Made by a program: the position numbers and the translations under genes. 64,000 bases of DNA, taken from positions 1 to 64,000 of the IMG/VR virus record IMGVR_UViG_3300042907_001080. One strand, given 5' to 3'. Shown piece after piece: positions 5,898 through 20,779 of this stretch. Position 1 is the first letter of the stretch; each line of letters opens with the position of its first letter. The notes beneath the pieces were generated by a model. The model did not search any database. It was not told the origin of the DNA and saw only the letters and a program-made list of their open reading frames with translations.

Positions 5898-6608
5898 TTA
5901 GTCGAGTATATTAGTCTGCTGTTCTAAACTGAGTTCTTGATCTTCCAATTCACGGATCTTGTCTGTGATTTGATCTATCAGTCCTAGATTGCGCAGGATC
6001 TTAAACACCACATTTTCCACCGAGTATTCCCCAGCACGATCAAGCCCAGCTCGGCGCATGGTAGTAATCTTGTCTTTGACGGTTCTCAGCTTGTCGAGAT
6101 CTTTTGACAGCAGAGCCTGTTCTATCTGCGAGAGCATGCTGTCTTTTTTAGCTTCCACTGCTTGATCGTCTAGATCAGGTTCTGTCTTCTGAGGCTTGAG
6201 AATCCATGTGTTATTGACCACGCTGTAGACACCTGTGCTGTGATGTGTTTCTGATTCACCTTGCACATAACATTCCACAGGCAGGCCTTTGACAGTGATA
6301 TCATGGTATTCTGCCCACAGTGCCTTTTTTGCTGAAAACAGCTCTCTTTGTGCATCTGAGACTTCACCTTCAATGATCACATGTAGATCAAGGTCGCTGT
6401 ATTTGCTCCAGGTATAATTGGCATTTGATCCAGTTATGGTGTAGTCTTTGACATCTAGATCTACACCCACAAAATCCACAAATGCACGAGCAATCTGCAA
6501 GAGTTTAAGACGAACTTCACCGTCCAGTCTCCCGCCTTGCCATAGCTTGGGATTCAGCTCTGAGTTTACCGTGACAAAATCTGTTTGGGAAAATTCTCGC
6601 AGTCGCAT
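5898..6608 (-). CDS. Pol-beta superfamily nucleotidyltransferase
   Basis: ITGSNANYTWSKYSDLDLHV = hG[S]x9-13 DhD motif; third acidic residue in PVECY; C-terminal helical region. Confidence 0.8.
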   Translation of the reverse strand: MRLREFSQTDFVTVNSELNPKLWQGGRLDGEVRLKLLQIARAFVDFVGVDLDVKDYTITGSNANYTWSKYSDLDLHVIIEGEVSDAQRELFSAKKALWAEYHDITVKGLPVECYVQGESETHHSTGVYSVVNNTWILKPQKTEPDLDDQAVEAKKDSMLSQIEQALLSKDLDKLRTVKDKITTMRRAGLDRAGEYSVENVVFKILRNLGLIDQITDKIRELEDQELSLEQQTNILD

Positions 6609-6972: not shown

Positions 6973-7212
6973 TTATTTAGCCCACATTAAGTGATAAGCT
7001 AATAGTGTTTGCTGATCGTAGAATTCTGCTACGAGCTTGAAATCGTCGTTGAGTTTATCTACAACTAACTGACATTTTTCTTTGGGCTGTTTATTGATCC
7101 AATTTATTAGATCTACTCCTACAGTTTTATGTACTTTGGGCCAGTCTACTTCTATTATATCTTTACCGTTGCGTGTGTGCCAATGATAAAGTTCAAACCT
7201 ACTACTCTTCAT
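6973..7212 (-). CDS. hypothetical protein
   Basis: 79-aa ORF overlapping helicase stop. Confidence 0.6.
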   Translation of the reverse strand: MKSSRFELYHWHTRNGKDIIEVDWPKVHKTVGVDLINWINKQPKEKCQLVVDKLNDDFKLVAEFYDQQTLLAYHLMWAK

Positions 7213-8659
7213 CTGTGTTCATGCTGTTTAATATTTCACGTAGTTTGGTGCTTTCTACCTGTGCTCGCACCTTGGGTTTATCTAGGCTGAATCCGTCTTT
7301 GGGTTCAGCACGTTCCCAACTAGGTTTGCTGTCACCGGGCTCTTCACGTGAAGTAAGTTCGGTCTTGCGTTTGATCTGTTCAATAATGCTGGATCCACCG
7401 CGTCCTGCGCCGTTGTGACTTTCTTGTTCATCTTCTGGAAGATCACTGATTCGCAGACTTTCAAGATTAAACTCTAGATCAATCTTCATGCCCACGCCAC
7501 TCGATGAGCGTGTCTTCATTAACTGTATTTGATAACGACCACGCTCACGCATGGCACGGCTTGTAAAGATACCAAACACGTTATCCGCAGTTTGAATCTT
7601 TGACAAACCGCCTGAAATGTGACTGTGATCAAATTCAACTTCTTCAACAGCGCCTCGATTCAACTGTGCCGCGGTGACAAATACACAGTTCTTTTCTACT
7701 GCTAGGTTACGAAGTTCTTCTGACACATACTTGTCTTTGATAAACAAGTCTGCTGGACTAATTTTCTTGCTCACTGGCATCAACAAGTCCAAATAATCAA
7801 CCAACAGCACATCGACTTTCTTGCCTACTTTGATTTCATATTCTTTCAAATATGCACGAATGTCGTTGGCAGTCTTGCCGCTAGGCATGTATTTGATCTG
7901 CAACATACCTGACTTCTTGCCAATCATTTTAACTTTCATTTCAACATCATCTAGCTCTTTGAAAATATCCTTGGTTGACGTTCCGGTGATCATTGCATCA
8001 ATACGCATACTAACTAGTGCTTCTGAAAGTTCAAGAGTTAGGTATACCACATTTAATCCTGCCAATGCCCAGTTCACGCCTAGATTAGCCAAGAATAAGG
8101 ATTTACCTGCACCTGACCCGCCTGCAAAGATGTTCAACTCTCCTCGATTCATTCCGCCAAACAGTTTACGATCCATACAGGGCCATCCTGTGCTCACTTG
8201 ACCGTTTTTGTCTTTGATGCCCATCAATCTTCCACGGGGATCAGCAAAATAGTCTGTGCCCATGTCTCGAGCAAGACCAATCTGCACAGCTTCTTTGATC
8301 AATACTTCTACTGCTCCGTAGTCATGTTTTTCTAATAAATCAGCACTTTCAATAATAGCACGTTCTAATGCCTTGTGTTGAGTGAACTTTTCGAATTCGT
8401 CCATGAACCAATCCATATGACCATCTTTGAGATCGTCGGGTCGTTTAAGTTCAGTTCTACAGGTGGCATTGACCATTTCATAGTCTGGCAATACATTATA
8501 GCCCTTGGCATATTCATTTATGAATTCTGCTGCATCTTGTAGTTTGCGATCAAACAGGCTGTGATCAAAAATACCTTGACATCGAACAAATACTTCTGCA
8601 TCTGCCAGCATGAGTTCAAGATATAATTTTTGCACTTCGTAATCGTATGTTTTTATCAT
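7202..8659 (-). CDS. replicative DNA helicase (T4 gp41/DnaB family)
   Basis: Walker A AGGSGAGKS, TLELSE, Walker B LLVDYLDL, TAAQLNR, MKTR. Confidence 0.92.
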   Translation of the reverse strand: MIKTYDYEVQKLYLELMLADAEVFVRCQGIFDHSLFDRKLQDAAEFINEYAKGYNVLPDYEMVNATCRTELKRPDDLKDGHMDWFMDEFEKFTQHKALERAIIESADLLEKHDYGAVEVLIKEAVQIGLARDMGTDYFADPRGRLMGIKDKNGQVSTGWPCMDRKLFGGMNRGELNIFAGGSGAGKSLFLANLGVNWALAGLNVVYLTLELSEALVSMRIDAMITGTSTKDIFKELDDVEMKVKMIGKKSGMLQIKYMPSGKTANDIRAYLKEYEIKVGKKVDVLLVDYLDLLMPVSKKISPADLFIKDKYVSEELRNLAVEKNCVFVTAAQLNRGAVEEVEFDHSHISGGLSKIQTADNVFGIFTSRAMRERGRYQIQLMKTRSSSGVGMKIDLEFNLESLRISDLPEDEQESHNGAGRGGSSIIEQIKRKTELTSREEPGDSKPSWERAEPKDGFSLDKPKVRAQVESTKLREILNSMNTDEE

Positions 8660-8666: not shown

Positions 8667-8695
8667 ATTATACACTCTAGTTGAACACAGGTAAA
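8667..8695 (-). promoter_or_regulatory. sigma70-type promoter, 7 nt from helicase ATG
   Basis: TTTACC-17 nt-TATAAT-ATAATAT-ATG; no SD. Confidence 0.6.
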
Positions 8696-10146
8696 CCATG
8701 CAGTTGGGTCCAGCTTTCTGCATCAGCAGCATCATTAACCATAGGCTTGCCTTTGATGTTTAGGCTGGTATTCAACAACATAGGACAACCAGTCTTTGCA
8801 TACCAAAGCTCTAACAAGGCGCGGAACTGAGGATTATCAGTCTTATTAACCGTCTGCACACGGCTGGTATTGTCTAGATGCACTATGGCCGGAAAAGACT
8901 CAGATTTCAAACAAGGCGAAATATATTGCATGTAAGTCGTTGATTCTGTTGGCATTTTAAAGTACTGATTTGCGAATTCTTCTAATATTGCAGGAGCGAA
9001 GGGTCTGAACTGCTCACGATGCTTTATCTGGTTAATTGCGACCTTGATTTCCGAACCACGTGGATCGGCTATCAAACTGCGGTTACCCAACGCTCTGGGC
9101 CCAAACTCTGCAGGGCCTCGAGCAAGACCACACATCTTGTATTCGAGTAAATGTGTCACGATATCTTCGTTGCTGGAGATATACCCCATGTCATATCCCA
9201 AATACGGACCAGTCCATTCTATGTGTTTTTTCTTATGTGCCAATACTGCACCAATACTGCTGCCACTGTCGCCGGGTGCAGGCATGATCCAAACTCGATC
9301 AAAATATTTGTAGGCTATGGGATTAGCTGCACAGTTTAGAGCGCAACCGCCCATCAACACTAGATTTCTACTTGAACTAGATCTTACGGCCTGCTGCAAC
9401 GCTCTCTCAAATGCCATTTCATACACAGCTTGTGTGGCTGCTGCTATATCGTAAAAATCTTGCTGTGTTGTTAATTCAGGTCGCCACCATGTGCATCCAC
9501 GATGTAGATTTTGTTTGATCCTGTAAACATGCTCATAATCGTCATTGGGTAAACTAACAAAATCATCTAGTAGATCTCTGAGAAATCTTTTTGGATTTCC
9601 CAATGCTGCCATGCCCATTAAGATATATTCTTCTTCGTTGGGTTTTAGTCCGCAGCGTTGTGTCATTGCGGAATAAAACAATCCTAGACTATTTGGATAT
9701 TCTAGACTATACCGTTTATGTAAGTTATTACCAACAGCATCCCATTGTGTTAGGCATTCAAATTCACCAATGGCATCGATTACTAGCACACAGGCATTGT
9801 CAAATTCGCTGGTATAATATCCTGCGGCGGCATGTGTTTGATGATGTCCAAAAGTTTTGATTGGTGCTCGAATGTTAAACTTTCTAAGATAATCTTTTAC
9901 ATTATTATTCTGCCATCCTTGCCCGGCAGTGAGCTGTCTTAGGGTTTTTAACCAAGGACGTTCATACCAACACACAAGATCAGGCTCGCCAAACGTTCGT
10001 GCATGATCTACTAGTTTTTGATCTAGATCGGCATCGTTTTTTATTCCGCTGAATCTTTCGCTTTCACTAGCGAAAATCAATTTGTCGTCTTCAAACACTG
10101 CTAATGCAGCGTTGTGACTAGCGGCAGAAATTCCCCAGGTAATCAT
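8677..10146 (-). CDS. carbamoyltransferase (NodU/CmcH/TobZ family)
   Basis: HNAALA, ESERFSGIK, HHQTHAAAGY, IDAIGE, GGCALN, PAPGDSG, EFGPRALGNRS, FRPFAP, NTSLN. Confidence 0.92.
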   Translation of the reverse strand: MITWGISAASHNAALAVFEDDKLIFASESERFSGIKNDADLDQKLVDHARTFGEPDLVCWYERPWLKTLRQLTAGQGWQNNNVKDYLRKFNIRAPIKTFGHHQTHAAAGYYTSEFDNACVLVIDAIGEFECLTQWDAVGNNLHKRYSLEYPNSLGLFYSAMTQRCGLKPNEEEYILMGMAALGNPKRFLRDLLDDFVSLPNDDYEHVYRIKQNLHRGCTWWRPELTTQQDFYDIAAATQAVYEMAFERALQQAVRSSSSRNLVLMGGCALNCAANPIAYKYFDRVWIMPAPGDSGSSIGAVLAHKKKHIEWTGPYLGYDMGYISSNEDIVTHLLEYKMCGLARGPAEFGPRALGNRSLIADPRGSEIKVAINQIKHREQFRPFAPAILEEFANQYFKMPTESTTYMQYISPCLKSESFPAIVHLDNTSRVQTVNKTDNPQFRALLELWYAKTGCPMLLNTSLNIKGKPMVNDAADAESWTQLHGLPVFN

Positions 10147-10259
10147 TTGTAGATAAAAGGATCACGTTTACGTAGCTCTTTTAATCTACGTTTGAATCTT
10201 CGGTGTTCTTGATATCTGTTCCAAGGGTAGAGCAGAAAATCTATAATTTTTTTAAACAT
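10143..10259 (-). CDS. small basic protein (38 aa, absent from ORF track)
   Basis: MFKKIIDFLLYPWNRYQEHRRFKRRLKELRKRDPFIYK*; bridges primase stop and carbamoyltransferase start with overlaps at both ends (ATGA coupling). Confidence 0.7.
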   Translation of the reverse strand: MFKKIIDFLLYPWNRYQEHRRFKRRLKELRKRDPFIYK

Positions 10260-11271
10260 TTTCTAACCTTTCTAATTTATGTTCTTGTTGTTTCTTGGCC
10301 ATGTTAATTTTAATCTGTCCTTGTTGTGCTGTTTTTATTGCATCTACAAGCACAAATAACTTCCCATAACGATATACTGCATCTGCTACATCTTTGACAT
10401 CGGCATCCCAATTTGGTATAGCCACTGACCAACCAAGTTCTGCTGCACGATCATACAACACCAATCCTGCTCGATCTTGGTCTGGGATCACAATAACTTC
10501 TGCACCTAGACTGTTAATTATTCTACTTTGTTGTTCGGCAATCTCGTTGGTAAGAAGGGCTACACCGTCAATGGCCAAGGCATCAAACGGGCCTTCACAC
10601 ACAAATATATACTTCTGATTTTCTTTTTGTTGATCAAAATTGAAAACAAAATGAGGATGCTGATCTGATAGATATTTAGGTTTTCCGGCAGTTACTTTTC
10701 TTGCAGTATTACCTACAATACGTCCTTGCCACCTAAAGGGAATAATTACTCTATCAACATATCCTGGTGCGGGACTCCAGTAGAAGTTTTCGCTAGTGGG
10801 ATCGTATCCTCTACTAACTACATATTCAACAACTTCTACTAACTTTTGCTCTTCTTCAGTAGTTAATTTAGCATCTAGCCATTCTAACAAAGGCATTGCA
10901 CCCTCTGGTAATTGTTTGTCTGTGAATTCTAGCTTGATTTCCTGGTGTTCTGGGCGGTAATCATCGCCTTCTGTTCTCATGGCTTCGAACACTAGTTCTT
11001 TAATAGTGTCTTCGCTGGCGCCTAACCATCTGCACAGCGTTTTCATCTTTTCGCCTATGGTGCTACCAGGTTGCCACCCTGTGGTAAATTTGCAATTGAA
11101 ACAGTTATAGATTACACCATCACCGTCAAATCTTATGCCGGCACGTTTGCGAGTATCAGGACTATGCCCTCGATGTTGACAGCAGGGTGCATTGAATGAT
11201 GTCCATCCTGATGGGCTCGATTTAGCACGAGGTGGGAGCAGTGTTCGAAATTTATCAACGACAAGAGTCAT
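10252..11271 (-). CDS. DNA primase (T4 gp61-like)
   Basis: N-terminal Zn-binding CCQHRGH...CFNC; TOPRIM motifs VCEGPFD and IPDQD. Confidence 0.88.
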   Translation of the reverse strand: MTLVVDKFRTLLPPRAKSSPSGWTSFNAPCCQHRGHSPDTRKRAGIRFDGDGVIYNCFNCKFTTGWQPGSTIGEKMKTLCRWLGASEDTIKELVFEAMRTEGDDYRPEHQEIKLEFTDKQLPEGAMPLLEWLDAKLTTEEEQKLVEVVEYVVSRGYDPTSENFYWSPAPGYVDRVIIPFRWQGRIVGNTARKVTAGKPKYLSDQHPHFVFNFDQQKENQKYIFVCEGPFDALAIDGVALLTNEIAEQQSRIINSLGAEVIVIPDQDRAGLVLYDRAAELGWSVAIPNWDADVKDVADAVYRYGKLFVLVDAIKTAQQGQIKINMAKKQQEHKLERLENV

Positions 11272-11306: not shown

Positions 11307-12366
11307 TGGTTCCAACAGGAATATTAGAGTCATTTAACACAAATGTTTTGACTCCATTATATGAAAGGCCGGTATATGTAAATCCAGTAATGCCGCCGTC
11401 TGCATTAACAGCAGAAACCGTGATAGTGAGATCATTGGTTCCCAATTCTCCACCCAATTTATTACCTGTGATGACAATAATATCACCTACATCATAACCT
11501 TTGCCAATCTCACCAATAGTAACATTATATGTTAGTAGAAGAGTTTGAGCTATGGTAAATCTTGCGACGCTGGAAATTTCGCCTGGAGTGTGTTTGATTC
11601 TAAACCAATTATACTTGCCTGTGACGTTTTTATACTGTTCGGTATCAAGATCCACGGTAGACACTGTGATCCATTTAGTCTCTCTTGGTGTGGCTCCTTG
11701 ATCGTCTAAACTGGCCTGTATCTCTACTGTGCCTTTGTAATTAGTAGAGTAAAATTGAAATGTGTGAATAGGATAGGCTGGCGATGTTTTAGGACGAGCA
11801 TCTATAATAGCACTGGTGTAAAATGGTTGAGGATCAGTGGCACCTTGAGTGAAAGGATTGGTATAATTAAATGTGTCTACTATTACACTGTCTGCTACCC
11901 CGCCGTATACATCGCCAGTGATTTCTAAGGTGCCTATAGTATCATATTGGCTGTCCATATATAAAGGCATTTTAGAATTTACTATATAGTCTGTGCTGTC
12001 TACTGTAGATCGAACTTCTTTGACTATGCTGTAGTTATAGAATCCTGTATTAAGATCCAGCAGTTCGTCGGCAGTAACAATCACAGTGACCTTGCCGGTA
12101 GCAAGATCCATAGCAGTGAAGTCTTTTTGTAGCACTAAATCTTTAGTGTCTTGACTGACGAGATTAAATACCAAAGTGCTGCCCGCAATGTTGCTGGCCT
12201 TTTGATCACTATTACGAACTTGGATGTCAATGCGATTATCAACACCTCGAAATATTTTTAGATTTCTGTTATACACTCTGCGATACCTCTCAGTTGACCA
12301 AGTGTCCGCCGGGGTGGTAAATACATCGAGTTTGTTGACATATAAATAAACAGGATTAAATTGCAT
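11284..12366 (-). CDS. probable virion structural protein (Ig-like/baseplate- or fibre-associated)
   Basis: beta-rich T/S/G/V composition; C-terminal GKGYDVGDIIVITGNKLGG...NDLTITV module typical of fibre proteins; TAAATA at 12388-12393 (minus). Confidence 0.5.
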   Translation of the reverse strand: MQFNPVYLYVNKLDVFTTPADTWSTERYRRVYNRNLKIFRGVDNRIDIQVRNSDQKASNIAGSTLVFNLVSQDTKDLVLQKDFTAMDLATGKVTVIVTADELLDLNTGFYNYSIVKEVRSTVDSTDYIVNSKMPLYMDSQYDTIGTLEITGDVYGGVADSVIVDTFNYTNPFTQGATDPQPFYTSAIIDARPKTSPAYPIHTFQFYSTNYKGTVEIQASLDDQGATPRETKWITVSTVDLDTEQYKNVTGKYNWFRIKHTPGEISSVARFTIAQTLLLTYNVTIGEIGKGYDVGDIIVITGNKLGGELGTNDLTITVSAVNADGGITGFTYTGLSYNGVKTFVLNDSNIPVGTIDKILYR

Positions 12367-12397: not shown

Positions 12398-12769
12398 ATG
12401 AGAATAACAACTAACCTACAAGAAAATTTTCCCTTTATCAGTGTTATAGTGCATGTTAACCATGAATATGTGGGCATCATTATTAACCAAGATGCTCAAG
12501 TCACTAGTATGTATGACTATTCTATGATAAAAACAGACGAGGAAAAACAGCGATTTCTAGAACTAGGCGAAGCCTGGTGGTGGGAGTCGAACAGGCAAAT
12601 TCCTATCAACATTTTCTTGGCCAGAGAAATCATTGAATTTCGATACGTAATTAGAAATTTTTCAACTAAAGATGTCAAACTCATGCACGGTCCCTGCACT
12701 AGTTTAAATGACATTATTGTCAAACGAATCAAGCGTAAGTCGATTACTCTAGTTAGAAAGATCGGTTAA
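12398..12769 (+). CDS. hypothetical protein
   Basis: 123-aa ORF divergent from previous gene. Confidence 0.75.
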   Translation: MRITTNLQENFPFISVIVHVNHEYVGIIINQDAQVTSMYDYSMIKTDEEKQRFLELGEAWWWESNRQIPINIFLAREIIEFRYVIRNFSTKDVKLMHGPCTSLNDIIVKRIKRKSITLVRKIG

Positions 12770-13514
12770 CTTGTTTTTCTAATAATTTTTTTATATCGGG
12801 ATTCTTTTTCCAAGGACCTGTTAGAGACCAAATCTTAGAATCTTGCTTTTTAGTTACAAAATTTTCTAAATTGCACAAATTAAAAAAATCGTGTTCTTGA
12901 GTTATTAGTTCCGACATGCAGACCTGATCTAATCCATACATATTCGCTCTTTGCAGTTTTTCCATATTTTCGGTAATAGTTTCAAACGGAATATGTTGAA
13001 TTTTTTCGTTGTATAAATTTACAATATTTTTTATAAAGTTTTTTCTTTTGTCAGTAACATAAAGAAAATTAGCTCCGGTTTTCTTCCACAAAGTATCATA
13101 CTGTGGATAATATAGAATACCCAACTCTACGCTATTGTCAAAATTTATTCTTTCATTAAAAATAATATCTGCGTCTACTATGTATGCTTTAGAAATTAAA
13201 TTTTGTTCGAACAATAGATTAGAAATAAAATATCTCGAACAAAAATAATAACTTTTTAGTTTATAAAAATTAATATTTGTAGTTGTTAACTTCTCTTTAC
13301 TAATTGAAAGATCGATTGATAATTTTAAATTTTTAATTTGCTCAAGTAGTAAATCGGAAGGATTTATTAAATGTAAATGAACGTCGTGACCGTGATTGTC
13401 GCAAGAAAATAAATTATAAATTCCATAATTTATAAAATAATTCTCATCACATTGAAAAATTACTTTTTCTCTACCGTTTGGTCTAGAAATTAATTCTACA
13501 TCTTGAAAAAACAT
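12753..13514 (-). CDS. GT-A-like glycosyltransferase
   Basis: HLHLINP, CSRY, IVDADII (DxD), GLDQ; visibly AT-rich; same motif order as 15938-16621. Confidence 0.6.
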   Translation of the reverse strand: MFFQDVELISRPNGREKVIFQCDENYFINYGIYNLFSCDNHGHDVHLHLINPSDLLLEQIKNLKLSIDLSISKEKLTTTNINFYKLKSYYFCSRYFISNLLFEQNLISKAYIVDADIIFNERINFDNSVELGILYYPQYDTLWKKTGANFLYVTDKRKNFIKNIVNLYNEKIQHIPFETITENMEKLQRANMYGLDQVCMSELITQEHDFFNLCNLENFVTKKQDSKIWSLTGPWKKNPDIKKLLEKQVNRSF

Positions 13515-14092
13515 TAACTATACCCGTAACTGATCTGCTCACAGATCAAATTCATCTGCACCACAATAGCTACAGCATAGGCAGTGGCATGCGATTGTTT
13601 GAAGAAATATTCTTCATTGTCGGGTTTCGTCCAAACTTCCGTCATCACCGTGGTCCATTCTTTCCCAATCAGATAACGTTTCGCTGGTCGGATCATCGCT
13701 AAAACGGCTGCTAGTTGTTCGATAGATTTTGGTTCCATCTTTCTTAGTATAGATCCATGACCGTTCACATGAAACAGATTCTGGATAAACTCTTCGTCTT
13801 GTAGTAGATCCCATAATGGCTCAGTCTCCATGAGTTGAATAAGGTGCGCCTCATCTCGAACACCTTTGTAAATGCCAACATTTAAAAAATCAATCTTGAA
13901 ATATTCTTCGGCTGCTGCATGATCGTATGGTATACTGCACACAGCTTTCTCAGCATTCATTGGAACACTATGTAAATACACACCGGTGTTGTGTTTGGTC
14001 AGAGTTTCGTTGTCAACACGGCTGGCTGGCACATGCTTGAATAACTTTAGAGCATGGGCTCTGTCTACAAAGTCTATGTCGATATCAGGCAT
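13514..14092 (-). CDS. miniature DNA polymerase III alpha (DnaE/family C) catalytic core, 192 aa
   Basis: MPDIDIDF, KHNTGVY, FKIDFL, LAAVLAMIRP, FKQSHATAYA in DnaE order; start at ATG 14092 overlapping upstream stop. Confidence 0.8.
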   Translation of the reverse strand: MPDIDIDFVDRAHALKLFKHVPASRVDNETLTKHNTGVYLHSVPMNAEKAVCSIPYDHAAAEEYFKIDFLNVGIYKGVRDEAHLIQLMETEPLWDLLQDEEFIQNLFHVNGHGSILRKMEPKSIEQLAAVLAMIRPAKRYLIGKEWTTVMTEVWTKPDNEEYFFKQSHATAYAVAIVVQMNLICEQISYGYS

Positions 14093-14297
14093 TGTTTTTG
14101 ATCTCTGCGGGTGGAGTCCATGTAGCATAGTCTATCTTCTTCCACTGTCTAGGCCCGGGTGTGGTGTAAGGAGTATATATCTCGCCAGTCTCTCTATCAA
14201 CCAACAACCATTTCTCTGGGCATTTAGTTGTAATTGTTAATTCTACTGCCGTATTGTATTCTTGAACTGTGGTTCCGTCTATGAGTTGTCTTGACAT
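14085..14297 (-). CDS. hypothetical protein
   Basis: Coupled operon member. Confidence 0.7.
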   Translation of the reverse strand: MSRQLIDGTTVQEYNTAVELTITTKCPEKWLLVDRETGEIYTPYTTPGPRQWKKIDYATWTPPAEIKNNA

Positions 14298-14494
14298 TAC
14301 TGCATCCTTGTTGTTTCGAATAGCAACAACGGAAGTGTCTCTGCTAAAAATGCTGCATATTCTTCTGCAGATTCTTCATCTGCAAAGTTTGAAAATTTAA
14401 CATATACACAGTGTTCACTATCTTCTTCTGTAGTCATTACTTCTATATCTATGTCATCACTAGAAATTAATTCTTGTTTGTTTTCTTCAGTCAC
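14297..14494 (-). CDS. small acidic protein
   Basis: D/E-rich 65 aa; coupled operon member. Confidence 0.65.
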   Translation of the reverse strand: MTEENKQELISSDDIDIEVMTTEEDSEHCVYVKFSNFADEESAEEYAAFLAETLPLLLFETTRMQ

Positions 14495-15174
14495 AGTATT
14501 TTGGCCTCCTTGATGACATCTTTTACTAATTCATGATCTGCTGGCAGAGCTTTAAATCTACGCAACCAAAACTGAGGATCTATCATAGGCCCGATGATTT
14601 CTAATTGTTCATCGTTCATGCGGGTCAACATTTCTTTGCCTGATCGAGTATTCAATATCATCCAAGGACTTACTAATCCTTCTTTGATATCATGAGTGGC
14701 TCTGTTTAGATTTACATAGGCAAAATAATGTTCCCATGCTGCAGAGTTTGATTCCGCCCATGACATCATGGTCATGATACTGCGTTGTATGGCACCATCA
14801 GCAGGCTCTACTTTGATTAAATCTGCGATATAGCTTTGATACAATTCATCTCTGCACCAATGATCTAGTTTAACTCCGCTCTTGACCACGTAGTCTACAA
14901 ATCGCTCAGGATATATAGGCGCTGTATTAACCAAGAAACTGCCAAATTTCACAAAGGCTGTATAGAAACTAGAAGTGGCAAACTCTTCAAAGGTCTTGGG
15001 CTGTTGTGCTTTTTGTGTGAGCTGATAGAATCTTTGGAATGTCAACAATCCCATTAGCACATGTTTTTCATTGCGGCTAAGATGGCGACGCTTTTGTTCA
15101 CAAATATGCACTACCAAAGTTTTTTCTTTGGCAAATAATTTATTGCAATGTTCGCACTTAAAATTTAATTGCAT
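14491..15174 (-). CDS. C2H2 zinc-finger-containing protein
   Basis: FKCEHCNKLFAKEKTLVVHIC; start moved to ATG 15174. Confidence 0.7.
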   Translation of the reverse strand: MQLNFKCEHCNKLFAKEKTLVVHICEQKRRHLSRNEKHVLMGLLTFQRFYQLTQKAQQPKTFEEFATSSFYTAFVKFGSFLVNTAPIYPERFVDYVVKSGVKLDHWCRDELYQSYIADLIKVEPADGAIQRSIMTMMSWAESNSAAWEHYFAYVNLNRATHDIKEGLVSPWMILNTRSGKEMLTRMNDEQLEIIGPMIDPQFWLRRFKALPADHELVKDVIKEAKIL

Positions 15175-15637
15175 TGACTTCTTTTTTGTCCCATCCAAGG
15201 GTTTGACAATAGTCTTTGATTTCTCGATCTGTAGTGATGGCTGCAAGTGTAGCAATGTCTGCCCTTTTCATAGTTGGAAATATCGTGGCAAGAAATTCTT
15301 CTTTCCTGTTCTTTTCTTTTTTCAGAGGAATCCATTCATGAAACTGTTTGGCTTTAGATTCGTGACTGCAAGCCACTAATGTCAGCCATTGCAGTTTAGG
15401 GTGTTGGCTAATGTTGGCCCAGTTTTTGTTGTAGTATTGATTTACAGTGAGCAGATAGTGTTCTTGTATTTCTCTATCAGAGCCCGATACACTGCTGATA
15501 TATCTGTTGAGATTCCACAGATCTCCTTTGATTTCTTTTCGGCCTTCTTCTGTGGCAGCGTCCCAGAGTTCTTTGATTCCCTGATCAACACAGGGTATGA
15601 TATCTTTGAATAGATCTACGTGTTTATTTTTGGCCAT
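15158..15637 (-). CDS. possible clamp-loader small subunit (T4 gp62-like)
   Basis: Size and WNLNRYISSV...VNQYYN...HPKLQW...HEWI pattern recalled from gp62-like proteins; not verified. Confidence 0.4.
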   Translation of the reverse strand: MAKNKHVDLFKDIIPCVDQGIKELWDAATEEGRKEIKGDLWNLNRYISSVSGSDREIQEHYLLTVNQYYNKNWANISQHPKLQWLTLVACSHESKAKQFHEWIPLKKEKNRKEEFLATIFPTMKRADIATLAAITTDREIKDYCQTLGWDKKEVNAIKF

Positions 15638-15937: not shown

Positions 15938-16621
15938 TTATACCTGCGAATTATAAAAATTTAATAAGTTTACATACTGTTCGTTTTCATGTTTTCTAGA
16001 TCCTTTAGCAGTCCATATCATTCGTTCGGGGGTCATTTTTGTACCGGTCCATTCAGAACTTAATCGAGGTATTGATTTTTCTATCATCATAGCATCTAAT
16101 ATATCTTGATCTAAAAACCAATAAATGTTTCCTTGTTTGAAACTTTCTTGTAATCTAGTGCTATAAGTATTTCTAAAATCATCATCTCCAAACGATATTG
16201 CACTGGCTAACGATTTGCCACCTTTTCTAATAGTAATTTTACTAATGTTAGTTGCCTCTAAAAATTTAATTAATGGAATTGTTTTATTGGCAATCACATC
16301 ACAATCAAAACTTATAATTTTTGCAGCTGGATCAAATATTTCCGGAATTCGTATAAATCGAATGCAGGCACATAGGGTATTAAATTCTTTATCATCAACA
16401 TCTAGTAATTCGTTGGTGTAACTTATATTTTTTTGAGAACACCATTCTAGTTGTTTGTCTGTTGGATTATACAAGTGAACATGAACTTTTGCCCACGGCG
16501 CATGTTGTAGTAAACTTAAGGCCAGTGCTTTACCATATAGATCAAAATATTTTGAATCTGCCGCAAAATAAAAAAAGTTACCCGTTAATCGAGCCGGTAT
16601 ATTCAAAGAAGGAAGAATCAT
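15938..16621 (-). CDS. GT-A-like glycosyltransferase
   Basis: HVHLYNP, CIRF, FDCDVI (DxD), WFLDQ; last gene of sugar operon. Confidence 0.6.
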   Translation of the reverse strand: MILPSLNIPARLTGNFFYFAADSKYFDLYGKALALSLLQHAPWAKVHVHLYNPTDKQLEWCSQKNISYTNELLDVDDKEFNTLCACIRFIRIPEIFDPAAKIISFDCDVIANKTIPLIKFLEATNISKITIRKGGKSLASAISFGDDDFRNTYSTRLQESFKQGNIYWFLDQDILDAMMIEKSIPRLSSEWTGTKMTPERMIWTAKGSRKHENEQYVNLLNFYNSQV

Positions 16622-17433
16622 AGATTTTTTAATTCAATAAGCATTTGATCGTAATCGGAAATATTAAACTCTAATAATTTACGTGTGTCAATTAAGATTT
16701 TGTTTACGGGCTTTGGACCTTGTGTTTGTATAATGGTTTTGTTAAGAGCAAATATATCGTTTATTTTACACAACAAGTCATATTTGTTAATCTTATTATC
16801 ATTGTTAACAAGATGATACACTCCCGTAATTACCGGAGTTTGCATGTATTGATCAATGCATTTTGCCAACTGTAAGGTAGTGATGCCGTTCCACCAAGCA
16901 TTGTTCCATCCTTGCAATTCACTTGCAGAATTATTGACAATCCAATTAAAGAGTCCTGTGCCATTTGATTTTATTTCAGGTCCGATGATACTCATTCTAA
17001 AAGTAACGTCTTTATCGTTGTTAATTTCACCTAGAGATTTCGACTTGCCATACAAGTTAGTTTCGGTGTGTGTATCTAATTCAACATAGTTTCCTTTCTT
17101 GCCATCAAACACACAATCAGTTGATAAGTGAACCACTCGTGTTTTGCTTTTTAAAAAGGTATGTTCTAAAAAGTGTGGAAACCAACCATTGATCAATGCA
17201 GCACGATCCGGACGATCGTTACTATCTTTAACTAACAATCCCACACAATTGATCACAAAGTCAAAAATATTTGTAACTTCACCGAGGCGTTGTATTTCTG
17301 CAAAATTCTCAACATCTATAATAAGATCTGCATTAGATCTTGCCAGTGTGCTTACATCGTGGCCTTGTTGTTTGAGATATCGAGTGATAACATGACCGGC
17401 CATACCGTTACTGCCAACTACTAAGATTTTCAT
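16618..17433 (-). CDS. RmlD-like NAD(P)H sugar 4-reductase (SDR)
   Basis: GSNGMAG, HLSTDCVF, YGKSK (YxxxK). Confidence 0.88.
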   Translation of the reverse strand: MKILVVGSNGMAGHVITRYLKQQGHDVSTLARSNADLIIDVENFAEIQRLGEVTNIFDFVINCVGLLVKDSNDRPDRAALINGWFPHFLEHTFLKSKTRVVHLSTDCVFDGKKGNYVELDTHTETNLYGKSKSLGEINNDKDVTFRMSIIGPEIKSNGTGLFNWIVNNSASELQGWNNAWWNGITTLQLAKCIDQYMQTPVITGVYHLVNNDNKINKYDLLCKINDIFALNKTIIQTQGPKPVNKILIDTRKLLEFNISDYDQMLIELKNL

Positions 17434-18422
17434 ATAAAATTGCCTTTCTTAAGCATTTCTTTAATGGCATTGCGTTGCATAATAAATGTTTTAGAACTAA
17501 ACTCTTCTTCTGAAAACTTCTCTAAGCTGCTATACTTGTCTATTAATGTTTGTTTAGGATTAAATGGTAGTATCACAAAATATGCATCGTCATATTTGTA
17601 TGACATTACTGCTTCGTGTTTTGATATCAGCATCTCATCTAATTTTTCACCGGGTTTACTCCCCATCTCTGTAATTTCTGCATCGCCGTAGACATCTATC
17701 AAAATGTCTGCGATATCTTTGATGTATGCCGCTGGCATATTCATTACAAATGTTTCACCACCTATACTTTCTTCGGCAGCTTTAAATAGTAAACCAATAG
17801 CTTCTTCGAGTGTTAAGAAGAATCGAGTCATTCTTAGATCAGTGATAGTAACCGGTCCACCGTTACGGATCTGTTCTATAAAGTATGGAATAACACTGCC
17901 ATTAGATCCCATAACATTGCCTCCACGTACACAGACAAATCTAGTATGATCGGTTAGATCGTTGGCTTGAATAATCAACTTTTCACCCACAGCTTTAGTC
18001 ATTCCGTATAAGTTCAATGGCTCAACTGCCTTGTCGGTGGATACATCGATGACTTTTTTAACACGATTTTCAATCGCAGCATTAACAACATTTGTTGTAC
18101 CTATTACATTTGTTTTAATAGCTTCCTGAGGTTGATCTTCGCAGATAGGTACGTGTTTAAGAGCAGCCATGTGAAAAATATAATCAACATTCTTAGTAGC
18201 AAACTTAACTGCTTCGTAGTCTCTAACATCTCCTATGATGTATTTGATATTGAGATTTTTAAACTTACGTTGCATTAATACCTGCTGAAGTTCACCTCTT
18301 GAAAAAATAATAATTTCTTTAGGGTTGTGTTTTTCAAGCATTAATCGAGTCAGTGTTTGCCCCCACGAGCCAGTGCCGCCTGTAATTAAAATTCGTGCGT
18401 TGTCAAAAATACTATCATTCAT
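17430..18422 (-). CDS. UDP-GlcNAc 4,6-dehydratase (FnlA/WbjB/CapD/PseB family)
   Basis: ITGGTGSWG, IGDVRD, AALKHVP, STDKA, YGMTKA, GNVMGSNGSVIP, MTRF, PGEKL. Confidence 0.9.
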   Translation of the reverse strand: MNDSIFDNARILITGGTGSWGQTLTRLMLEKHNPKEIIIFSRGELQQVLMQRKFKNLNIKYIIGDVRDYEAVKFATKNVDYIFHMAALKHVPICEDQPQEAIKTNVIGTTNVVNAAIENRVKKVIDVSTDKAVEPLNLYGMTKAVGEKLIIQANDLTDHTRFVCVRGGNVMGSNGSVIPYFIEQIRNGGPVTITDLRMTRFFLTLEEAIGLLFKAAEESIGGETFVMNMPAAYIKDIADILIDVYGDAEITEMGSKPGEKLDEMLISKHEAVMSYKYDDAYFVILPFNPKQTLIDKYSSLEKFSEEEFSSKTFIMQRNAIKEMLKKGNFI

Positions 18423-19173
18423 ATTTTACTCCGATGTCATCTGGGTTGTGGAATAATGCTCTATGTTTGTTATCCAAAGATTCCACTTCCTCTGCAGGTC
18501 TTGTATTTGTATAGTAATACAAAATTAATGATCTACGACTTCTATCTTCGGGGCATTTTAACGGAGTAGGATGACCGTGAAAACTAAAATCGTCAGTTCT
18601 AAATACAACCAGTCTGTTAAGTAATGGACTAATTTTATCAACGCATACTCCTGGTTTGTTGTCGGGGGTTCTAGACCACATTTCTAAATGGCCTCCCCAT
18701 TCTTCTTGCCAATTATCGTTTAAGTATAGGATAACATTTAATCTTCTGTGTACTCCCATTAGATCGTGCCAGTTGCCGTCTGCGTGTACTGCTAGTGTGC
18801 CGCCTGTATTGATCTGGTTAAATCCGCCGCCTGTTAGATAGGGATCAGGAATAAGCCCATTAATTCCAGTTAGCTTAGATAAGAATCTTAAAAATGTTCC
18901 ACCATTTAAAAAATTAATTAAATCCAATGTGTTAGCAGGAACATCACTATCGTCTTTCCAATCACTACGCCATTTAATTTGAATCTTATCGTGATTACGC
19001 TTGTCCCAACTTTCAAAATTTTCATTGTTGAAGTCAGTTAGTGTTTCATTAATAACTTTTTCTGTAAAAAAATCATCTATAGCAATATAGTTAAACGGTT
19101 GCTTAGATTGAAATTCGTTAGAAAGATCTTCTAGATCAAATTTGTCAAATTCTACATATTTCTTTTTCATCAA
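18415..19173 (-). CDS. 2OG-Fe(II) oxygenase (HxD...H type)
   Basis: LAVHADGN, RRLNVILYLN, WGGHLE, SFHG, RRSL. Confidence 0.85.
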   Translation of the reverse strand: MMKKKYVEFDKFDLEDLSNEFQSKQPFNYIAIDDFFTEKVINETLTDFNNENFESWDKRNHDKIQIKWRSDWKDDSDVPANTLDLINFLNGGTFLRFLSKLTGINGLIPDPYLTGGGFNQINTGGTLAVHADGNWHDLMGVHRRLNVILYLNDNWQEEWGGHLEMWSRTPDNKPGVCVDKISPLLNRLVVFRTDDFSFHGHPTPLKCPEDRSRRSLILYYYTNTRPAEEVESLDNKHRALFHNPDDIGVKYE

Positions 19174-19179
19174 TTGTCC

Positions 19180-20253
19180 TTAGTTCGACAGTAGTATGTT
19201 AACAACTACGTCTGATACATTATTTTGATTGTACTCTTCAGGTATTTTCCAGTTCCTGTCAGCTGACTTCATTCTGTTAAAGCAGGCAACAATATTTTCT
19301 TTATCCAAGCCGCTAATTACGTTAGAGCCGCACCAAACTGTTTCTGGTCTTTCTGTTGTATCTCTAATGGTAATTGTTGGTATACCGAATAAACACATTT
19401 CTTCTTGAACCGTTCCTGAATCGCTAATTGCCATATGTGCATTTTTTTCTAAGTTGACAAAATCAAAAAACCCCAAAGGTTCCGTTATTATAATGTTTGG
19501 ATTATCAACTAAAATATTAAACTTTGCTAATTTTTGTTTGGTTCTAGGATGACAACTAAACACTATCTTATATTCTTTAGATATTTCTTCAAAACTTTCA
19601 AAAATATTAATCAACCGATCGTTAACATCAACATTTTCTGCTCGATGCGCTGTGGCTATAATGTAGTTATTTTTTTCAAGATTAAGTGCTGATAATATAG
19701 GAGAACTGTCTATTTCATTTGCATAAAAATCTATTACTTCTTTAATTGGATTCCCCGTGACAAATACTTTGTTGTTTGCAGCACCTTCACGCAATAAATT
19801 TTGACGGCTTAACTCAGTATAAGGTAAATTTATACTAGACACGGCATCAATAATTTTTCTATTCTTTTCTTCAGGAACTTTAAGATCATAACAACGATTG
19901 CCAGCTTCCATATGATAGACCGGAATGCCTAATCTTTCACATATAATTGCTGCTAGGCCTGAATTGGTGTCGCCCAATATCAAAACTTTATCAGGCTTAA
20001 ATTCGTTTACAAATTTTTCAACACCTACAAATGTATTACCAATTTGTTCTGCAAAGGATACAGATTTATTGTCAATTACATAATCTGGGTTTCTTAAACT
20101 CAATTCTTTGAAGAATACATCATTTAAATTTTTATCATAATTTTGACCGGTATGCAATATTTTATGATCAACAATGTTATCAAGTTTAGGAATAATTCTA
20201 GATAGTCTTATAATCTCAGGTCTTGTTCCTAAAATTGTTAGAACCTTAGTCAT
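19180..20253 (-). CDS. UDP-HexNAc 2-epimerase, non-hydrolysing (FnlC/WbjD/Cap5G-like)
   Basis: GTRPEIIR, HTGQNYD, LGDTNS, HMEAGNRCYD..PEEKNR, SDSGTVQEE, TERPE. Confidence 0.9.
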   Translation of the reverse strand: MTKVLTILGTRPEIIRLSRIIPKLDNIVDHKILHTGQNYDKNLNDVFFKELSLRNPDYVIDNKSVSFAEQIGNTFVGVEKFVNEFKPDKVLILGDTNSGLAAIICERLGIPVYHMEAGNRCYDLKVPEEKNRKIIDAVSSINLPYTELSRQNLLREGAANNKVFVTGNPIKEVIDFYANEIDSSPILSALNLEKNNYIIATAHRAENVDVNDRLINIFESFEEISKEYKIVFSCHPRTKQKLAKFNILVDNPNIIITEPLGFFDFVNLEKNAHMAISDSGTVQEEMCLFGIPTITIRDTTERPETVWCGSNVISGLDKENIVACFNRMKSADRNWKIPEEYNQNNVSDVVVNILLSN

Positions 20254-20779
20254 TTGGAAATACCCCAACAAAATAATGGCAAAGACTAGGTAAGTCTAAT
20301 GGTGTCCAGTCTGTAAAATCTTCTTTATGCCAAAGACTTTTATGTATGTCAAAAGTATTACCATAGCACCATAATCTTGGATCATTTACATTTTTATGAT
20401 TATCATCCCAAATTTCTTCTAACGGAGTCAATAATACAATTTTTTTAGTGGTAAGAGTTTTCACAGAATCTAAAAGACGAATGCCTGCATCTTTATCAAG
20501 GTGTTCGATAAAATCTATCATTAAAACATAATCAAATTTCTCACCGCCTAATAAGGTGTTTAGATCAACAGTTTCTAGGTCTGCTACAAAATCTGGATTC
20601 ACTGACTCCCATGCATCAATTGTGATAATTTTGCTACATCTGTCTTTAAATGGATCTGAATATAATTTCGGACCGCATCCGAGATCTAAAATAGAATCTC
20701 CTTCTTTAACAACGGAGTGTAGATATCTCATTAGCTCGTCGTTCGATGAAGCTCGTTTTCCGTTTATATTGTGTTTCAT
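20246..20779 (-). CDS. class I SAM-dependent methyltransferase
   Basis: ILDLGCG, FDYVLMIDFIEHL. Confidence 0.85.
   Translation of the reverse strand: MKHNINGKRASSNDELMRYLHSVVKEGDSILDLGCGPKLYSDPFKDRCSKIITIDAWESVNPDFVADLETVDLNTLLGGEKFDYVLMIDFIEHLDKDAGIRLLDSVKTLTTKKIVLLTPLEEIWDDNHKNVNDPRLWCYGNTFDIHKSLWHKEDFTDWTPLDLPSLCHYFVGVFPND

What the first reader, a model, noticed from the sequence alone, without database searches (positions are those of the whole stretch)
13514..14092. Miniature 192-aa DnaE (family C polymerase) keeping all three catalytic aspartates
Seen: PDIDID (res 2-7), KHNTGVY (33-39), KIDFL (66-70) and FKQSHATAYA near the C-terminus in one short ORF, flanked by coupled genes, so it is not a frameshift fragment. 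Known: E. coli DnaE is about 1160 aa with D401/D403 and D555 some 150 residues apart, plus PHP, thumb, clamp-binding and OB domains. Inference: the spacing here is about 63 residues, so most of the thumb and all accessory domains are missing. It may be a split polymerase whose partners lie elsewhere, or a repurposed nucleotidyltransferase or primer-extension enzyme. Short phage DnaE-like ORFs may already be catalogued in jumbo phages, but I know of no demonstrated function.
Basis: partly seen in the sequence, partly recalled or inferred. Interest (0 to 1): 0.7.

Follow-up and report, generated by a model that had tools for sequence, protein, structure and literature searches.

The report
Half of a split mini-DnaE polymerase
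The 192-residue ORF is the catalytic half of a two-gene, stripped-down bacterial-type (Pol III alpha) DNA polymerase that a clade of jumbo phages carries beside an ordinary family B replicase; it was predicted from genomes in 2021 and I found no biochemical test of it.

Summary
Window 13514-14092 (minus strand) encodes a 192-aa protein with the DnaE motifs at the stated positions. Independent lake-metagenome assemblies reproduce the sequence without indels.

It is not a complete miniature polymerase. It is the C-terminal half of a split minimal Pol III alpha. The missing half is a 153-aa ORF carrying the invariant GxGRGSS phosphate-binding loop. It lies 176 kb away in the same 281.7-kb phage record and ends just where this ORF begins (EFFKGE | MPDIDIDF).

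- Both halves co-occur in Rak2/121Q/PA5oct/Atu_ph07-type jumbo phages.
- Both are under purifying selection (dN/dS 0.12 and 0.22).
- A rare lineage has them fused into one 375-aa protein.
- Co-folding gives 0.91 against 0.00 for the best control.
- The model aligns over its whole length to DnaE/PolC (Z 9.5 to Taq 461-841).
- The thumb, the PHP domain, about 100 finger residues and all C-terminal domains are absent.
- The genome also encodes a family B polymerase.

Iyer et al. 2021 (Viruses 13:63) described exactly this arrangement for "group 2.2" jumbo phages, and PHROGs lists both halves. I found no experimental study, so activity and role remain inferred. This is a known kind, and the window holds a new environmental member.

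The parts
13514..14092 (-). C-terminal unit of the split minimal Pol III alpha (192 aa). It carries the metal-binding aspartates and the reduced fingers.
   Evidence: Match to phrog_11778, E 1.4e-64. AF2 pLDDT 96.6. VIA-align Z 9.5 to Taq 3e0d 461-841 and Z 8.8 to E. coli 2hnh 400-787. Median dN/dS 0.12.
14069..14089 (-). PDIDIDF (residues 2-8). D3, D5 and D7 correspond to E. coli D401, D403 and D405.
   Evidence: D3 and D5 are invariant and D7 is present in 83 of 85 sequences. This strand contacts the N-unit strand W116-G117 in the co-fold.
13976..13996 (-). KHNTGVY (residues 33-39), equivalent to E. coli K510-HAGGVV. It follows the pre-thumb strand directly through a tight hairpin, so the thumb is deleted.
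   Evidence: H34 is present in 84 of 85 and G37 in 83 of 85 sequences. Strands 21-27 and 30-39 form the hairpin in the model. D7 to K33 is 26 residues, against 105 in E. coli.
13883..13897 (-). KIDFL (residues 66-70). K66 and D68 correspond to E. coli K553 and D555, the third catalytic aspartate.
   Evidence: K66 and D68 are invariant in 85 of 85 sequences. The family profile aligns here to E. coli 539-641.
13679..13693 (-). IRPAK (residues 134-138), equivalent to the E. coli F638-R639-P640 finger motif.
   Evidence: R135 is present in 84 of 85 sequences and P136 in 85 of 85. Alignment to E. coli is.
13574..13603 (-). FKQSHATAYA (residues 164-173), equivalent to E. coli F756-NKSHSAAYA.
   Evidence: K165 is present in 78 of 85 and H168 in 83 of 85 sequences. 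The profile aligns to E. coli 742-769. Residues 165-178 touch the N unit in the co-fold.
14085..14494 (-). Context only: two small coupled ORFs (70 and 65 aa) between the zinc-finger gene and the C unit. They are variable among relatives.
   Evidence: They are present in 30 and 60 of 80 related loci. One metatranscriptome contig of a relative skips 14089-14295.
14491..15255 (-). Context only: a conserved phage-specific C2H2 zinc-finger protein (phrog_11058) that lies upstream of the C unit. Its start is probably at residue 28.
   Evidence: Match to phrog_11058, E 5.8e-58. Present in 80 of 80 related loci. Genes of similar size sit in the same position in PA5oct, 121Q and Atu_ph07; their homology was not tested.
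10252..11271 (-). Context only: DNA primase, downstream in the same conserved module.
   Evidence: Match to phrog_47, E 2.1e-34. The order C unit, reverse small ORF, virion protein, primase, helicase is the same in PA5oct, 121Q and Atu_ph07.
7202..8659 (-). Context only: DnaB/gp41-like replicative helicase.
   Evidence: PF03796 DnaB_C, E 3.9e-17.

Best explanation
The ORF is the C-terminal subunit of a two-subunit, minimal C-family (Pol III alpha / DnaE-type) nucleotidyl polymerase of a freshwater jumbo phage.

The Pol-beta-like catalytic fold is divided between two polypeptides encoded 176 kb apart.
- The 153-aa N unit lies outside the window at 189994-190452 of the genome record. It supplies a helical scaffold and the invariant GxGRGSS triphosphate-binding loop (E. 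coli G359-S364).
- The 192-aa C unit is this ORF. It supplies the strand with D3 and D5, the strand with K66 and D68, and a cut-down finger module (R135-P136 and K165...H168).

The two chains assemble non-covalently, with the N-unit strand at about residues 113-118 pairing with the C-unit DxDxD strand. This forms one active site that would carry out two-metal nucleotidyl transfer.

Shown here:
- homology and fold;
- strict conservation of the catalytic residues;
- co-occurrence of the two genes, and their natural fusion in one lineage;
- purifying selection on both;
- a confident co-fold;
- absence of any other Pol III domain in the record;
- presence of a family B polymerase.

Inferred:
- The heterodimer is catalytically active.
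- It is a DNA-templated DNA polymerase.
- It has no thumb, clamp-binding, HhH or OB domains, so it is distributive or needs other phage replisome proteins.
- It serves as an accessory enzyme (primer extension, gap filling or repair) beside the T4-type PolB replisome, in whose gene module the C unit is embedded. It is not the main replicase.
For: Identity:
- The C unit matches phrog_11778 (E 1.4e-64). The N unit matches phrog_11127 (E 2.7e-38) and PF07733 above its cut-off.
- Family profiles align to E. coli DnaE 320-393 for the N unit (E 1.4e-9) and to 539-641 and 742-769 for the C unit.
- The C-unit model (pLDDT 96.6) aligns over 187-190 of 192 residues to Taq 461-841, E. coli 400-787 and PolC 971-1299 at Z 8.8-9.5. 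Unrelated chains score Z 3.3 or less. The 18 best Foldseek PDB hits are all C-family polymerases.

Catalytic residues:
- D3, D5, K66, D68 and P136 are invariant. D7, H34, G37, R135, K165 and H168 are at least 90% conserved in 85 diverse sequences.
- GxGRGSS is invariant in 39 N units, and all split forms end at EF[FL]K.

Partnership:
- Each gene is single-copy and they lie 175.9 kb apart.
- The same isolates hold both. Escherichia (34), Pseudomonas (11), Erwinia (8), Salmonella (8), Xanthomonas (4) and Yersinia (4) phages give identical tallies in the two searches, and Klebsiella gives 11 against 10.
- A 98%-complete relative has both genes, also about 176 kb apart.
- Three independent protein clusters (375-376 aa) are natural N+C fusions with a linker of about 10 residues. 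They nest inside the split clade.
- Co-fold score 0.91 against a best control of 0.00. This mark was reached by 58 of 80 solved complexes and 2 of 110 mismatched pairs. The runs agree in at least 96% of contacts and partner pLDDT is at least 75.
- Modelled alone, the N unit falls below pLDDT 50 at residues 117-127 and 133-153, which are the interface segments.

Selection: median dN/dS is 0.12 for the C unit and 0.22 for the N unit.

Context:
- PolB lies at 168.8-170 kb.
- There is no PHP, no second finger domain and no DnaQ-type exonuclease, and no other ORF resembles E. coli DnaE.
- The module C unit, reverse ORF, virion protein, primase, DnaB is conserved.

Literature: the same split minimal Pol III was predicted for group 2.2 jumbo phages (PMC7824862).
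Against: - No biochemical or genetic test of this family turned up in my literature searches, so activity, substrate and template dependence are inferences.
- The thumb is absent.
- The conserved finger segment of canonical DnaE (E. coli about 642-741, containing YQEQ and LRRAMGKK) has no counterpart. From memory, those arginines help bind the incoming dNTP, so nucleotide binding may differ from DnaE.
- E. coli R390 aligns with a glutamate in the N unit.
- Co-fold scores are model confidence, not binding data. Because the pair resembles one solved chain (DnaE), the score may partly reflect memory of that fold (caveat).
- Two of five long relatives selected for the C unit, and three of five selected for the N unit, lack the other half. 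All of these are 46-79% complete records.
- Evidence for transcription is weak. Only relatives at 80-95% likeness appear in metatranscriptome contigs, and DNA carry-over is not excluded.
Confidence: 0.75

Rival explanations
1. Repurposed nucleotidyltransferase. The two-subunit core is active but is not a templated DNA polymerase. It could be a terminal transferase, a primer-independent or RNA-linked synthase, or a maker of a nucleotide signal or decoy used in phage-host conflict.
For: All the DNA-duplex-binding parts of DnaE (thumb, HhH, beta-binding, OB) are missing, and so is the YQEQ/LRRAMGKK finger segment. The Pol-beta-like superfamily includes many non-polymerase transferases (own knowledge). 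The genome already has a complete PolB.
Against: The retained finger motifs (RP, KxSH) and the residues shared with DnaE beyond the minimal transferase fold are at least 90% conserved. The whole 192 residues superpose on the DnaE palm plus fingers. The gene sits in the primase-helicase module in distant phages.
Confidence: 0.13
2. Self-sufficient 192-aa miniature polymerase. The ORF works alone and the 153-aa ORF is unrelated to its function.
For: All three catalytic aspartates and K66 lie on this chain. The chain folds confidently on its own (pLDDT 96.6).
Against: The GxGRGS loop is part of the same fold in every C-family polymerase, and here it is on the other gene. The break point is identical across the family. 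The two halves co-occur and are fused in one lineage. The co-fold scores 0.91 against 0.00.
Confidence: 0.05
3. Decaying remnants of a once full-length phage dnaE with no present function, or an inactive structural mimic.
For: Pfam barely recognises the C unit (E 0.036). About 70% of the DnaE length is gone.
Against: Close relatives fill more than 8000 clusters at 90% identity, of uniform length. A separate search found 407 representatives of 50%-identity clusters. Catalytic residues are invariant. dN/dS is 0.12 and 0.22. The family is conserved from Agrobacterium to Escherichia phages.
Confidence: 0.03
4. The two halves are joined after translation by a split intein, as in cyanobacterial DnaE, or the split is an assembly or frameshift artefact.
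For: Cyanobacterial dnaE is encoded as two distant genes joined by a split intein (own knowledge).
Against: The N unit ends 2-3 residues after the last DnaE-homologous position, and the C unit starts 1 residue before PDIDID. This leaves no room for intein halves. The natural fusion has only a linker of about 10 residues. The two genes are 176 kb apart, and independent assemblies agree without indels.
Confidence: 0.01

Closest known systems
Split minimal DNA Pol III alpha of 'group 2.2' jumbo phages (Iyer, Anantharaman, Krishnan, Burroughs, Aravind 2021, Viruses 13:63; PHROGs 11127 + 11778; examples 121Q gp56 + gp16, PA5oct gp196 + gp264)
   Same: The two units are the same and the break point is the same. 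The genes are distantly located, a family B polymerase accompanies them, and no other Pol III domains are present. The C unit sits in the same neighbourhood by primase and helicase, and the N unit sits by a GroES-like gene.
   Different: Only in detail. The C unit is 35-51% identical to those of cultured phages. The genes are 176 kb apart here, against 30-45 kb in enterobacterial and Pseudomonas phages and 224 kb in Phosso. A window-specific gene is inserted after the C unit. The host is an uncultured lake organism.
Bacterial replicative DnaE / PolC (E. coli Pol III alpha, Taq 2HPI/3E0D, Geobacillus PolC 3F2B)
   Same: It has the same Pol-beta-like palm, with the GxGRGS loop, DxD and K-x-D, and the RP and KSH finger motifs. 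The C unit superposes on E. coli 400-787.
   Different: It is 345 aa in two chains, against about 1160 aa in one. It has no PHP domain, thumb, clamp-binding motif, HhH, OB or tau-binding domain, and about 100 finger residues including YQEQ/LRRAMGKK are missing. It is not the only polymerase of its genome.
Cyanobacterial split dnaE joined by the DnaE split intein
   Same: A C-family polymerase encoded by two genes far apart on the genome (own knowledge).
   Different: There, full-length DnaE is rebuilt covalently by protein trans-splicing. Here there are no intein sequences, the break lies inside the catalytic fold between the GRGS helix and the DxD strand, and assembly must be non-covalent.
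Split family B polymerase of nucleus-forming chimalliviruses (bioRxiv 2026, PMC13648687; title and abstract seen only)
   Same: A jumbo-phage DNA polymerase divided into separate polypeptides.
   Different: It belongs to a different polymerase family (B, not C) and a different phage group, and there it is the main replicase.

Membership tests
Split minimal Pol III alpha of group 2.2 jumbo phages (Iyer et al. 2021) | C-terminal Mg2+- and template-binding unit of about 190-210 aa | tested here: met
   Match to phrog_11778, E 1.4e-64, covering 11-198 of the 204-aa reading. It is 35-51% identical to the units of 96 jumbo phage records.
Split minimal Pol III alpha of group 2.2 jumbo phages (Iyer et al. 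2021) | Separate N-terminal NTP-binding unit encoded by a distant gene in the same genome | tested here: met
   A 153-aa ORF at G000:C1:189994-190452 (minus strand). It matches PF07733 at E 2.8e-10 and phrog_11127 at E 2.7e-38, is single-copy, and lies 175.9 kb away.
Split minimal Pol III alpha of group 2.2 jumbo phages (Iyer et al. 2021) | Accompanied by a family B polymerase and by no other Pol III domain | tested here: met
   PolB in an 895-aa frame, E 8.7e-30. There is no PHP, no further finger domain, no RNase_T/DnaQ and no other DnaE-like ORF. The record is about 80% complete, so these absences are provisional.
Split minimal Pol III alpha of group 2.2 jumbo phages (Iyer et al. 2021) | Jumbo phage genome (over 200 kb) with T4-type replication genes | tested here: met
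   A 281,658-bp virus record. It has a primase, a DnaB-like helicase and a UvsW-like helicase.
C-family DNA polymerase (DnaE/PolC) | Pol-beta-like palm with three catalytic aspartates and the K-x-D lysine | tested here: met
   D3, D5, K66 and D68 are invariant and map to E. coli D401, D403, K553 and D555. The structural match scores Z 8.8-9.5.
C-family DNA polymerase (DnaE/PolC) | GxGRGS phosphate-binding loop in the same catalytic domain | tested here: met
   It is present and invariant, but on the separate N unit. The co-fold places it against the DxDxD strand.
C-family DNA polymerase (DnaE/PolC) | N-terminal PHP domain | tested here: not met
   PF02811 finds nothing in the record, although it is detected in all 14 control genomes.
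C-family DNA polymerase (DnaE/PolC) | Thumb domain between the two palm halves | tested here: not met
   There are 26 residues between D7 and K33, against 105 in E. coli. The model has a tight hairpin there.
C-family DNA polymerase (DnaE/PolC) | Complete fingers, clamp-binding motif, HhH and OB/tau-binding C-terminus | tested here: not met
   The protein ends at the equivalent of E. coli residue 787 or so. E. coli 642-741 has no counterpart. No other ORF in the record is DnaE-like.
C-family DNA polymerase (DnaE/PolC) | Template-directed DNA synthesis | not testable with these tools
   This needs a primer-extension assay. I found no published assay.
Intein-split DnaE (cyanobacterial type) | N- and C-intein halves at the break | tested here: not met
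   The N unit ends EFFKGE and the C unit starts MPDIDIDF, with no spare residues.

The most novel reading that the evidence does not exclude
The two-chain (or, in one lineage, single-chain 375-aa) thumb-less core would be the smallest functional C-family polymerase. It may also do something a conventional DnaE does not.

One possibility is that it works only with an unidentified phage DNA-binding partner supplied in trans. The conserved C2H2 zinc-finger protein encoded just upstream is an untested candidate.

Another is that it acts as a specialised primer-extension, lesion-bypass or modified-nucleotide polymerase, or as a non-templated transferase.

None of these is excluded by my evidence, and none is specifically supported.
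Probability: 0.2. Interest if true: 0.7.

Novelty: already known. Interest (0 to 1): 0.4.

Why it matters
If the heterodimer is an active polymerase, it defines the minimal catalytic core of the bacterial replicative polymerase family: about 345 residues, no thumb, and a fold that tolerates being cut between its NTP-binding and metal-binding halves. Iyer et al. proposed it as a model of the ancestral Pol III.

The family is widespread. The freshwater lineage sampled here alone has hundreds of IMG/VR loci. A second polymerase beside PolB in these phages is therefore an unexplained and common feature of jumbo-phage replication.

For the scan itself, the point is that the finding is real but already published as a prediction.

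Tried and rejected
- Megablast of the region against phage genomes found no match. A single-sequence PDB search with the C unit found none either.
- I tried to model the natural fusion P0211 with a joint alignment. MAFFT laid the N units onto the C half, so I dropped that alignment and did not model the fusion.
- The N unit modelled alone gave pLDDT 61, too low for a fold search. I used it only to note that the disordered segments are the interface.
- The alignment-based scan of cellular genomes failed for lack of a conserved stretch. The single-protein scan found only two canonical actinobacterial DnaE genes at 27% identity. This means there is no close cellular relative within the limits of that pattern search.
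- The search for a DnaQ/epsilon-like partner, present in 121Q, CBB and Atu_ph07, was negative in this record by Pfam and by the 121Q gp9 protein.
- RNA evidence is weak. No metatranscriptome holds this phage; only diverged relatives were found.
- The promoter and terminator scan and the T4 late-promoter motif were not above chance.
- I rejected the intein, frameshift and pseudogene readings (see the rival explanations).
Full report
**1. The observation**

The minus strand of window 13514-14092 holds a 192-aa ORF beginning MPDIDIDF.
- An upstream ATG at 14128 would give 204 aa. However, metagenomic homologues are 192 aa and begin at the same methionine, and conservation begins at the DxDxD motif.
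- The ORF is translationally coupled on both sides. It overlaps the upstream 70-aa ORF by 8 nt and shares a TAATG with the next gene.
- The sequence is not an assembly accident. Twenty lake-water metagenome runs hold 99-100% of its sampled 31-mers. Independently assembled contigs cover it with no difference and no indel.

**2. What it is**

Pfam barely sees the protein: the finger domain scores E 0.036. It does match PHROG 11778, "DNA polymerase", a 197-position profile, at E 1.4e-64.

tblastn finds it at 35-51% identity in 96 jumbo-phage records, including Atu_ph07, Phosso, PA5oct, RaK2/K64-1, 121Q, GAP32, XacN1 and SCTP-2.
- An exhaustive HMMER search of 1.84 billion cluster representatives gave 407 hits, nearly all 185-215 aa.

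The window is the first 64 kb of a 281,658-bp IMG/VR virus record estimated at 80% complete.

**3. The partner**

Searching that record with PF07733 (DNA_pol3_alpha) found one hit above the curated cut-off. It is not the target ORF but a 153-aa ORF at 189994-190452 on the minus strand.
- It matches PHROG 11127, also "DNA polymerase".
- Its profile aligns to E. coli DnaE 320-393, which includes the GPGRGSGAGS loop. It also aligns weakly to Taq 409-454.
- It ends ...KYKLPINEFFKGE, equivalent to E. coli ...FDLLFERFLN(393). The target ORF begins at the equivalent of E. coli P400-D401.
- The two ORFs therefore abut in DnaE coordinates with no loss and no spare residues.

In 39 N units, GxGRGSS is invariant and every split form ends at EF[FL]K. 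The break is thus ancient and fixed.

**4. Evidence that the two act together**

(a) Co-occurrence. The two tblastn searches return identical tallies for Escherichia (34), Pseudomonas (11), Erwinia (8), Salmonella (8), Xanthomonas (4) and Yersinia (4) phages. Klebsiella gives 11 against 10.
- The genes lie 30-45 kb apart in the enterobacterial and Pseudomonas phages and 224 kb apart in Phosso.
- The extra N-unit hits (Bacillus, Clostridium, Cellulophaga) are probably full-length DnaE or PolC genes of other phages; I did not inspect them.
- Among long IMG/VR relatives, the only record at least 90% complete (353 kb, 98%) has both genes, again about 176 kb apart.
- Incomplete records have both in 3 of 5 and 1 of 4 cases.

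(b) Fusion. One representative, P0211 (375 aa), carries the N unit (42% identity over 109 residues, E 4e-20), then a linker of about 10 residues, then the C unit.
- Two further clusters from other samples (376 aa; 81% and 78% identical to P0211) share this architecture.
- In a maximum-likelihood tree of C units, the fused forms are one clade (support 1.0) nested inside stand-alone forms. This indicates a secondary re-fusion.

(c) Co-fold. The score is 0.91 in three runs against 0.00 for the best of three controls.
- This mark was reached by 58 of 80 solved complexes and 2 of 110 mismatched pairs.
- The runs agree in at least 96% of contacts, and the partner's pLDDT is at least 75.
- The interface pairs N-unit residues 112-126 (the strand and GRGSS loop) with C-unit residues 1-9 (the DxDxD strand) and 165-178 (the KSH helix).
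- Because the pair resembles a single solved chain, part of this score may be memory of the DnaE fold. It shows likeness, not measured binding.

(d) Folding alone. The C unit folds confidently by itself (pLDDT 96.6). The N unit does not (pLDDT 61), and it falls below 50 at residues 117-127 and 133-153, which are exactly its interface segments. This fits folding on assembly, which is an inference.

(e) Selection. Median pairwise dN/dS is 0.12 for the C unit and 0.22 for the N unit among close relatives.

**5. Anatomy relative to DnaE**

VIA-align superposes 187-190 of the 192 residues on Taq 461-841 (Z 9.5), Geobacillus PolC 971-1299 (Z 9.4), M. tuberculosis DnaE1 419-811 (Z 9.1) and E. coli 400-787 (Z 8.8). 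The next unrelated chain scores 3.3. Foldseek's 18 best PDB hits are all C-family polymerases.

Residue mapping to E. coli DnaE:

| C unit | E. coli DnaE |
|---|---|
| D3, D5, D7 | D401, D403, D405 |
| H34, G37 | H511, G514 |
| K66, D68 | K553, D555 |
| R135, P136 | R639, P640 |
| S167, H168 | S759, H760 |

Invariant in 85 diverse sequences: D3, D5, K66, D68 and P136. At least 90% conserved: D7, H34, G37, R135, K165 and H168.

What is missing:
- The stretch D7-K33 is 26 residues against 105 in E. coli, and the model shows a tight beta-hairpin (strands 21-27 and 30-39). The thumb (E. coli about 433-510 by my recollection of Lamers et al. 2006) is therefore cleanly deleted.
- Between R135 and F164 there are 29 residues against 117. 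E. coli about 642-741, which contains YQEQ and LRRAMGKK, has no counterpart.
- Everything beyond about residue 787 of E. coli is absent.
- The record contains no PHP domain, no second finger match and no DnaQ-type exonuclease.
- No other ORF resembles E. coli DnaE under phmmer --max at E <= 1.

The record does encode a family B polymerase in an 895-aa frame.

**6. Surroundings**

On the minus strand the order is:
- UvsW-like helicase (23651-25144);
- an inserted sugar-nucleotide island;
- small ORFs;
- a C2H2 zinc-finger protein (14491-15255, phrog_11058);
- two small variable ORFs;
- the C unit;
- a window-specific 253-aa gene;
- a reverse-strand 123-aa ORF (phrog_11637);
- a virion protein;
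- primase (10252-11271);
- carbamoyltransferase;
- DnaB-like helicase (7202-8659).

The core of this order holds in 69-80 of 80 IMG/VR relatives. The core is the zinc-finger gene, the C unit, the reverse ORF, the virion protein, and primase. PA5oct, 121Q and Atu_ph07 show the same gene order by their records' own annotation, continuing into the helicase.

The N unit is followed everywhere by an ORF of about 90-150 aa and then a GroES-like gene. The C unit therefore belongs to the replication module of a highly syntenic core genome. That fits a replication or repair role but is not specific evidence for one.

**7. Mechanism**

I commit to the following. The two chains assemble into one Pol-beta-like active site.
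- The N-unit GRGSS loop and C-unit K66 hold the triphosphate.
- D3, D5 and D68 hold two Mg2+ ions.
- The retained finger elements (R135-P136, K165/H168) close over the nascent pair.

Without a thumb, clamp-binding motif, HhH or OB domain, the enzyme should be distributive or dependent on other replisome proteins. With PolB present, it is most likely an accessory polymerase for primer extension, gap filling or repair. [quoted passage not shown]

The fold, residue conservation, pairing, fusion and selection are shown here. Activity, template dependence and role are inferred.

The main rival (about 0.13) is a non-templated or otherwise repurposed transferase, because so much DNA-binding surface and the LRRAMGKK segment are gone. 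The stand-alone, remnant, intein and artefact readings are disfavoured (see the rival explanations).

**8. Comparison with what is known**

Earlier genome papers noted the N unit as a "truncated" Pol III alpha:
- CBB, 172 aa (PMC5259590);
- Atu_ph07 gp316 (PMC6102473).

Every defining feature of that described system is met here (see the membership test).

I found no experimental work on it in the library. The library lacks most subscription journals, so this absence is provisional.

**9. Verdict**

The finding is real and correctly recognised as DnaE-like. The system is already known as a computational prediction, and this is a new environmental member.

- the location of the partner gene;
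- the natural fusion;
- a co-fold with controls;
- dN/dS estimates;
- a residue-level deletion map, including the loss of the thumb and of the YQEQ/LRRAMGKK segment.

Interest is moderate, because the biochemistry is still entirely open.

Noticed in passing
window 16618-23654 (minus strand): A sugar-nucleotide biosynthesis and modification island sits inside the replication module, between the UvsW-like helicase (23651-25144) and the C-unit operon. It contains an RmlD-like reductase, a Polysacc_synt_2 (CapD/PseB-type) dehydratase, a 2OG-Fe(II) oxygenase, a UDP-GlcNAc 2-epimerase, two methyltransferases and a GT2 glycosyltransferase. Its target is unknown. It could act on virion glycans, host surface sugars or DNA modification.
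   Followed up: partly
window 8677-10146 (minus strand): A carbamoyltransferase (Carbam_trans_N and Carbam_trans_C, E 1e-38 to 1e-49) lies between primase and the DnaB-like helicase. In PA5oct, 121Q and Atu_ph07 those two genes are adjacent. The carbamoyltransferase is present in 59 of 80 close relatives.
   Followed up: partly
window 12753-13514 and 15938-16621 (minus strand): Two distantly paralogous genes with no family match (29% identity, E 3e-5) flank the C-unit operon. They occur in only 6 of 80 related loci, so they are recent insertions.
   Followed up: partly
window 14491-15255 (minus strand): A phage-specific protein with an N-terminal C2H2 zinc finger (phrog_11058; its start is probably at residue 28) lies upstream of the C unit in all 80 close relatives. 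A gene of similar size occupies that position in PA5oct, 121Q and Atu_ph07. It is an untested candidate DNA-binding partner for the thumb-less polymerase.
   Followed up: partly
window 5898-6608 (minus strand): A second, unrelated Pol-beta-superfamily nucleotidyltransferase (PF01909 NTP_transf_2, E 9.6e-5) lies near the replication module.
   Followed up: no
L089:1066-2193 (P0211) and P0271, P0272: These are natural single-chain fusions of the two units (375-376 aa), found on short metagenome contigs from different samples. They are the simplest constructs for testing the enzyme.
   Followed up: yes
L001:835-1254 and 1263-1541 (genome 189.3-190.0 kb): The N unit is followed by a small ORF and a GroES-like co-chaperonin gene. 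This arrangement is conserved in PA5oct, 121Q, Phosso and Serratia phage BF. In this genome the GroES-like call rests on reading the sequence and on synteny with those annotated genes.
   Followed up: partly
window 12341-12348 (plus strand): A T4-late-promoter-like TATAAATA lies 50 nt upstream of the lone plus-strand ORF at 12398-12769. The motif is not more frequent in the window than chance (3 found against 4.8 expected).
   Followed up: no
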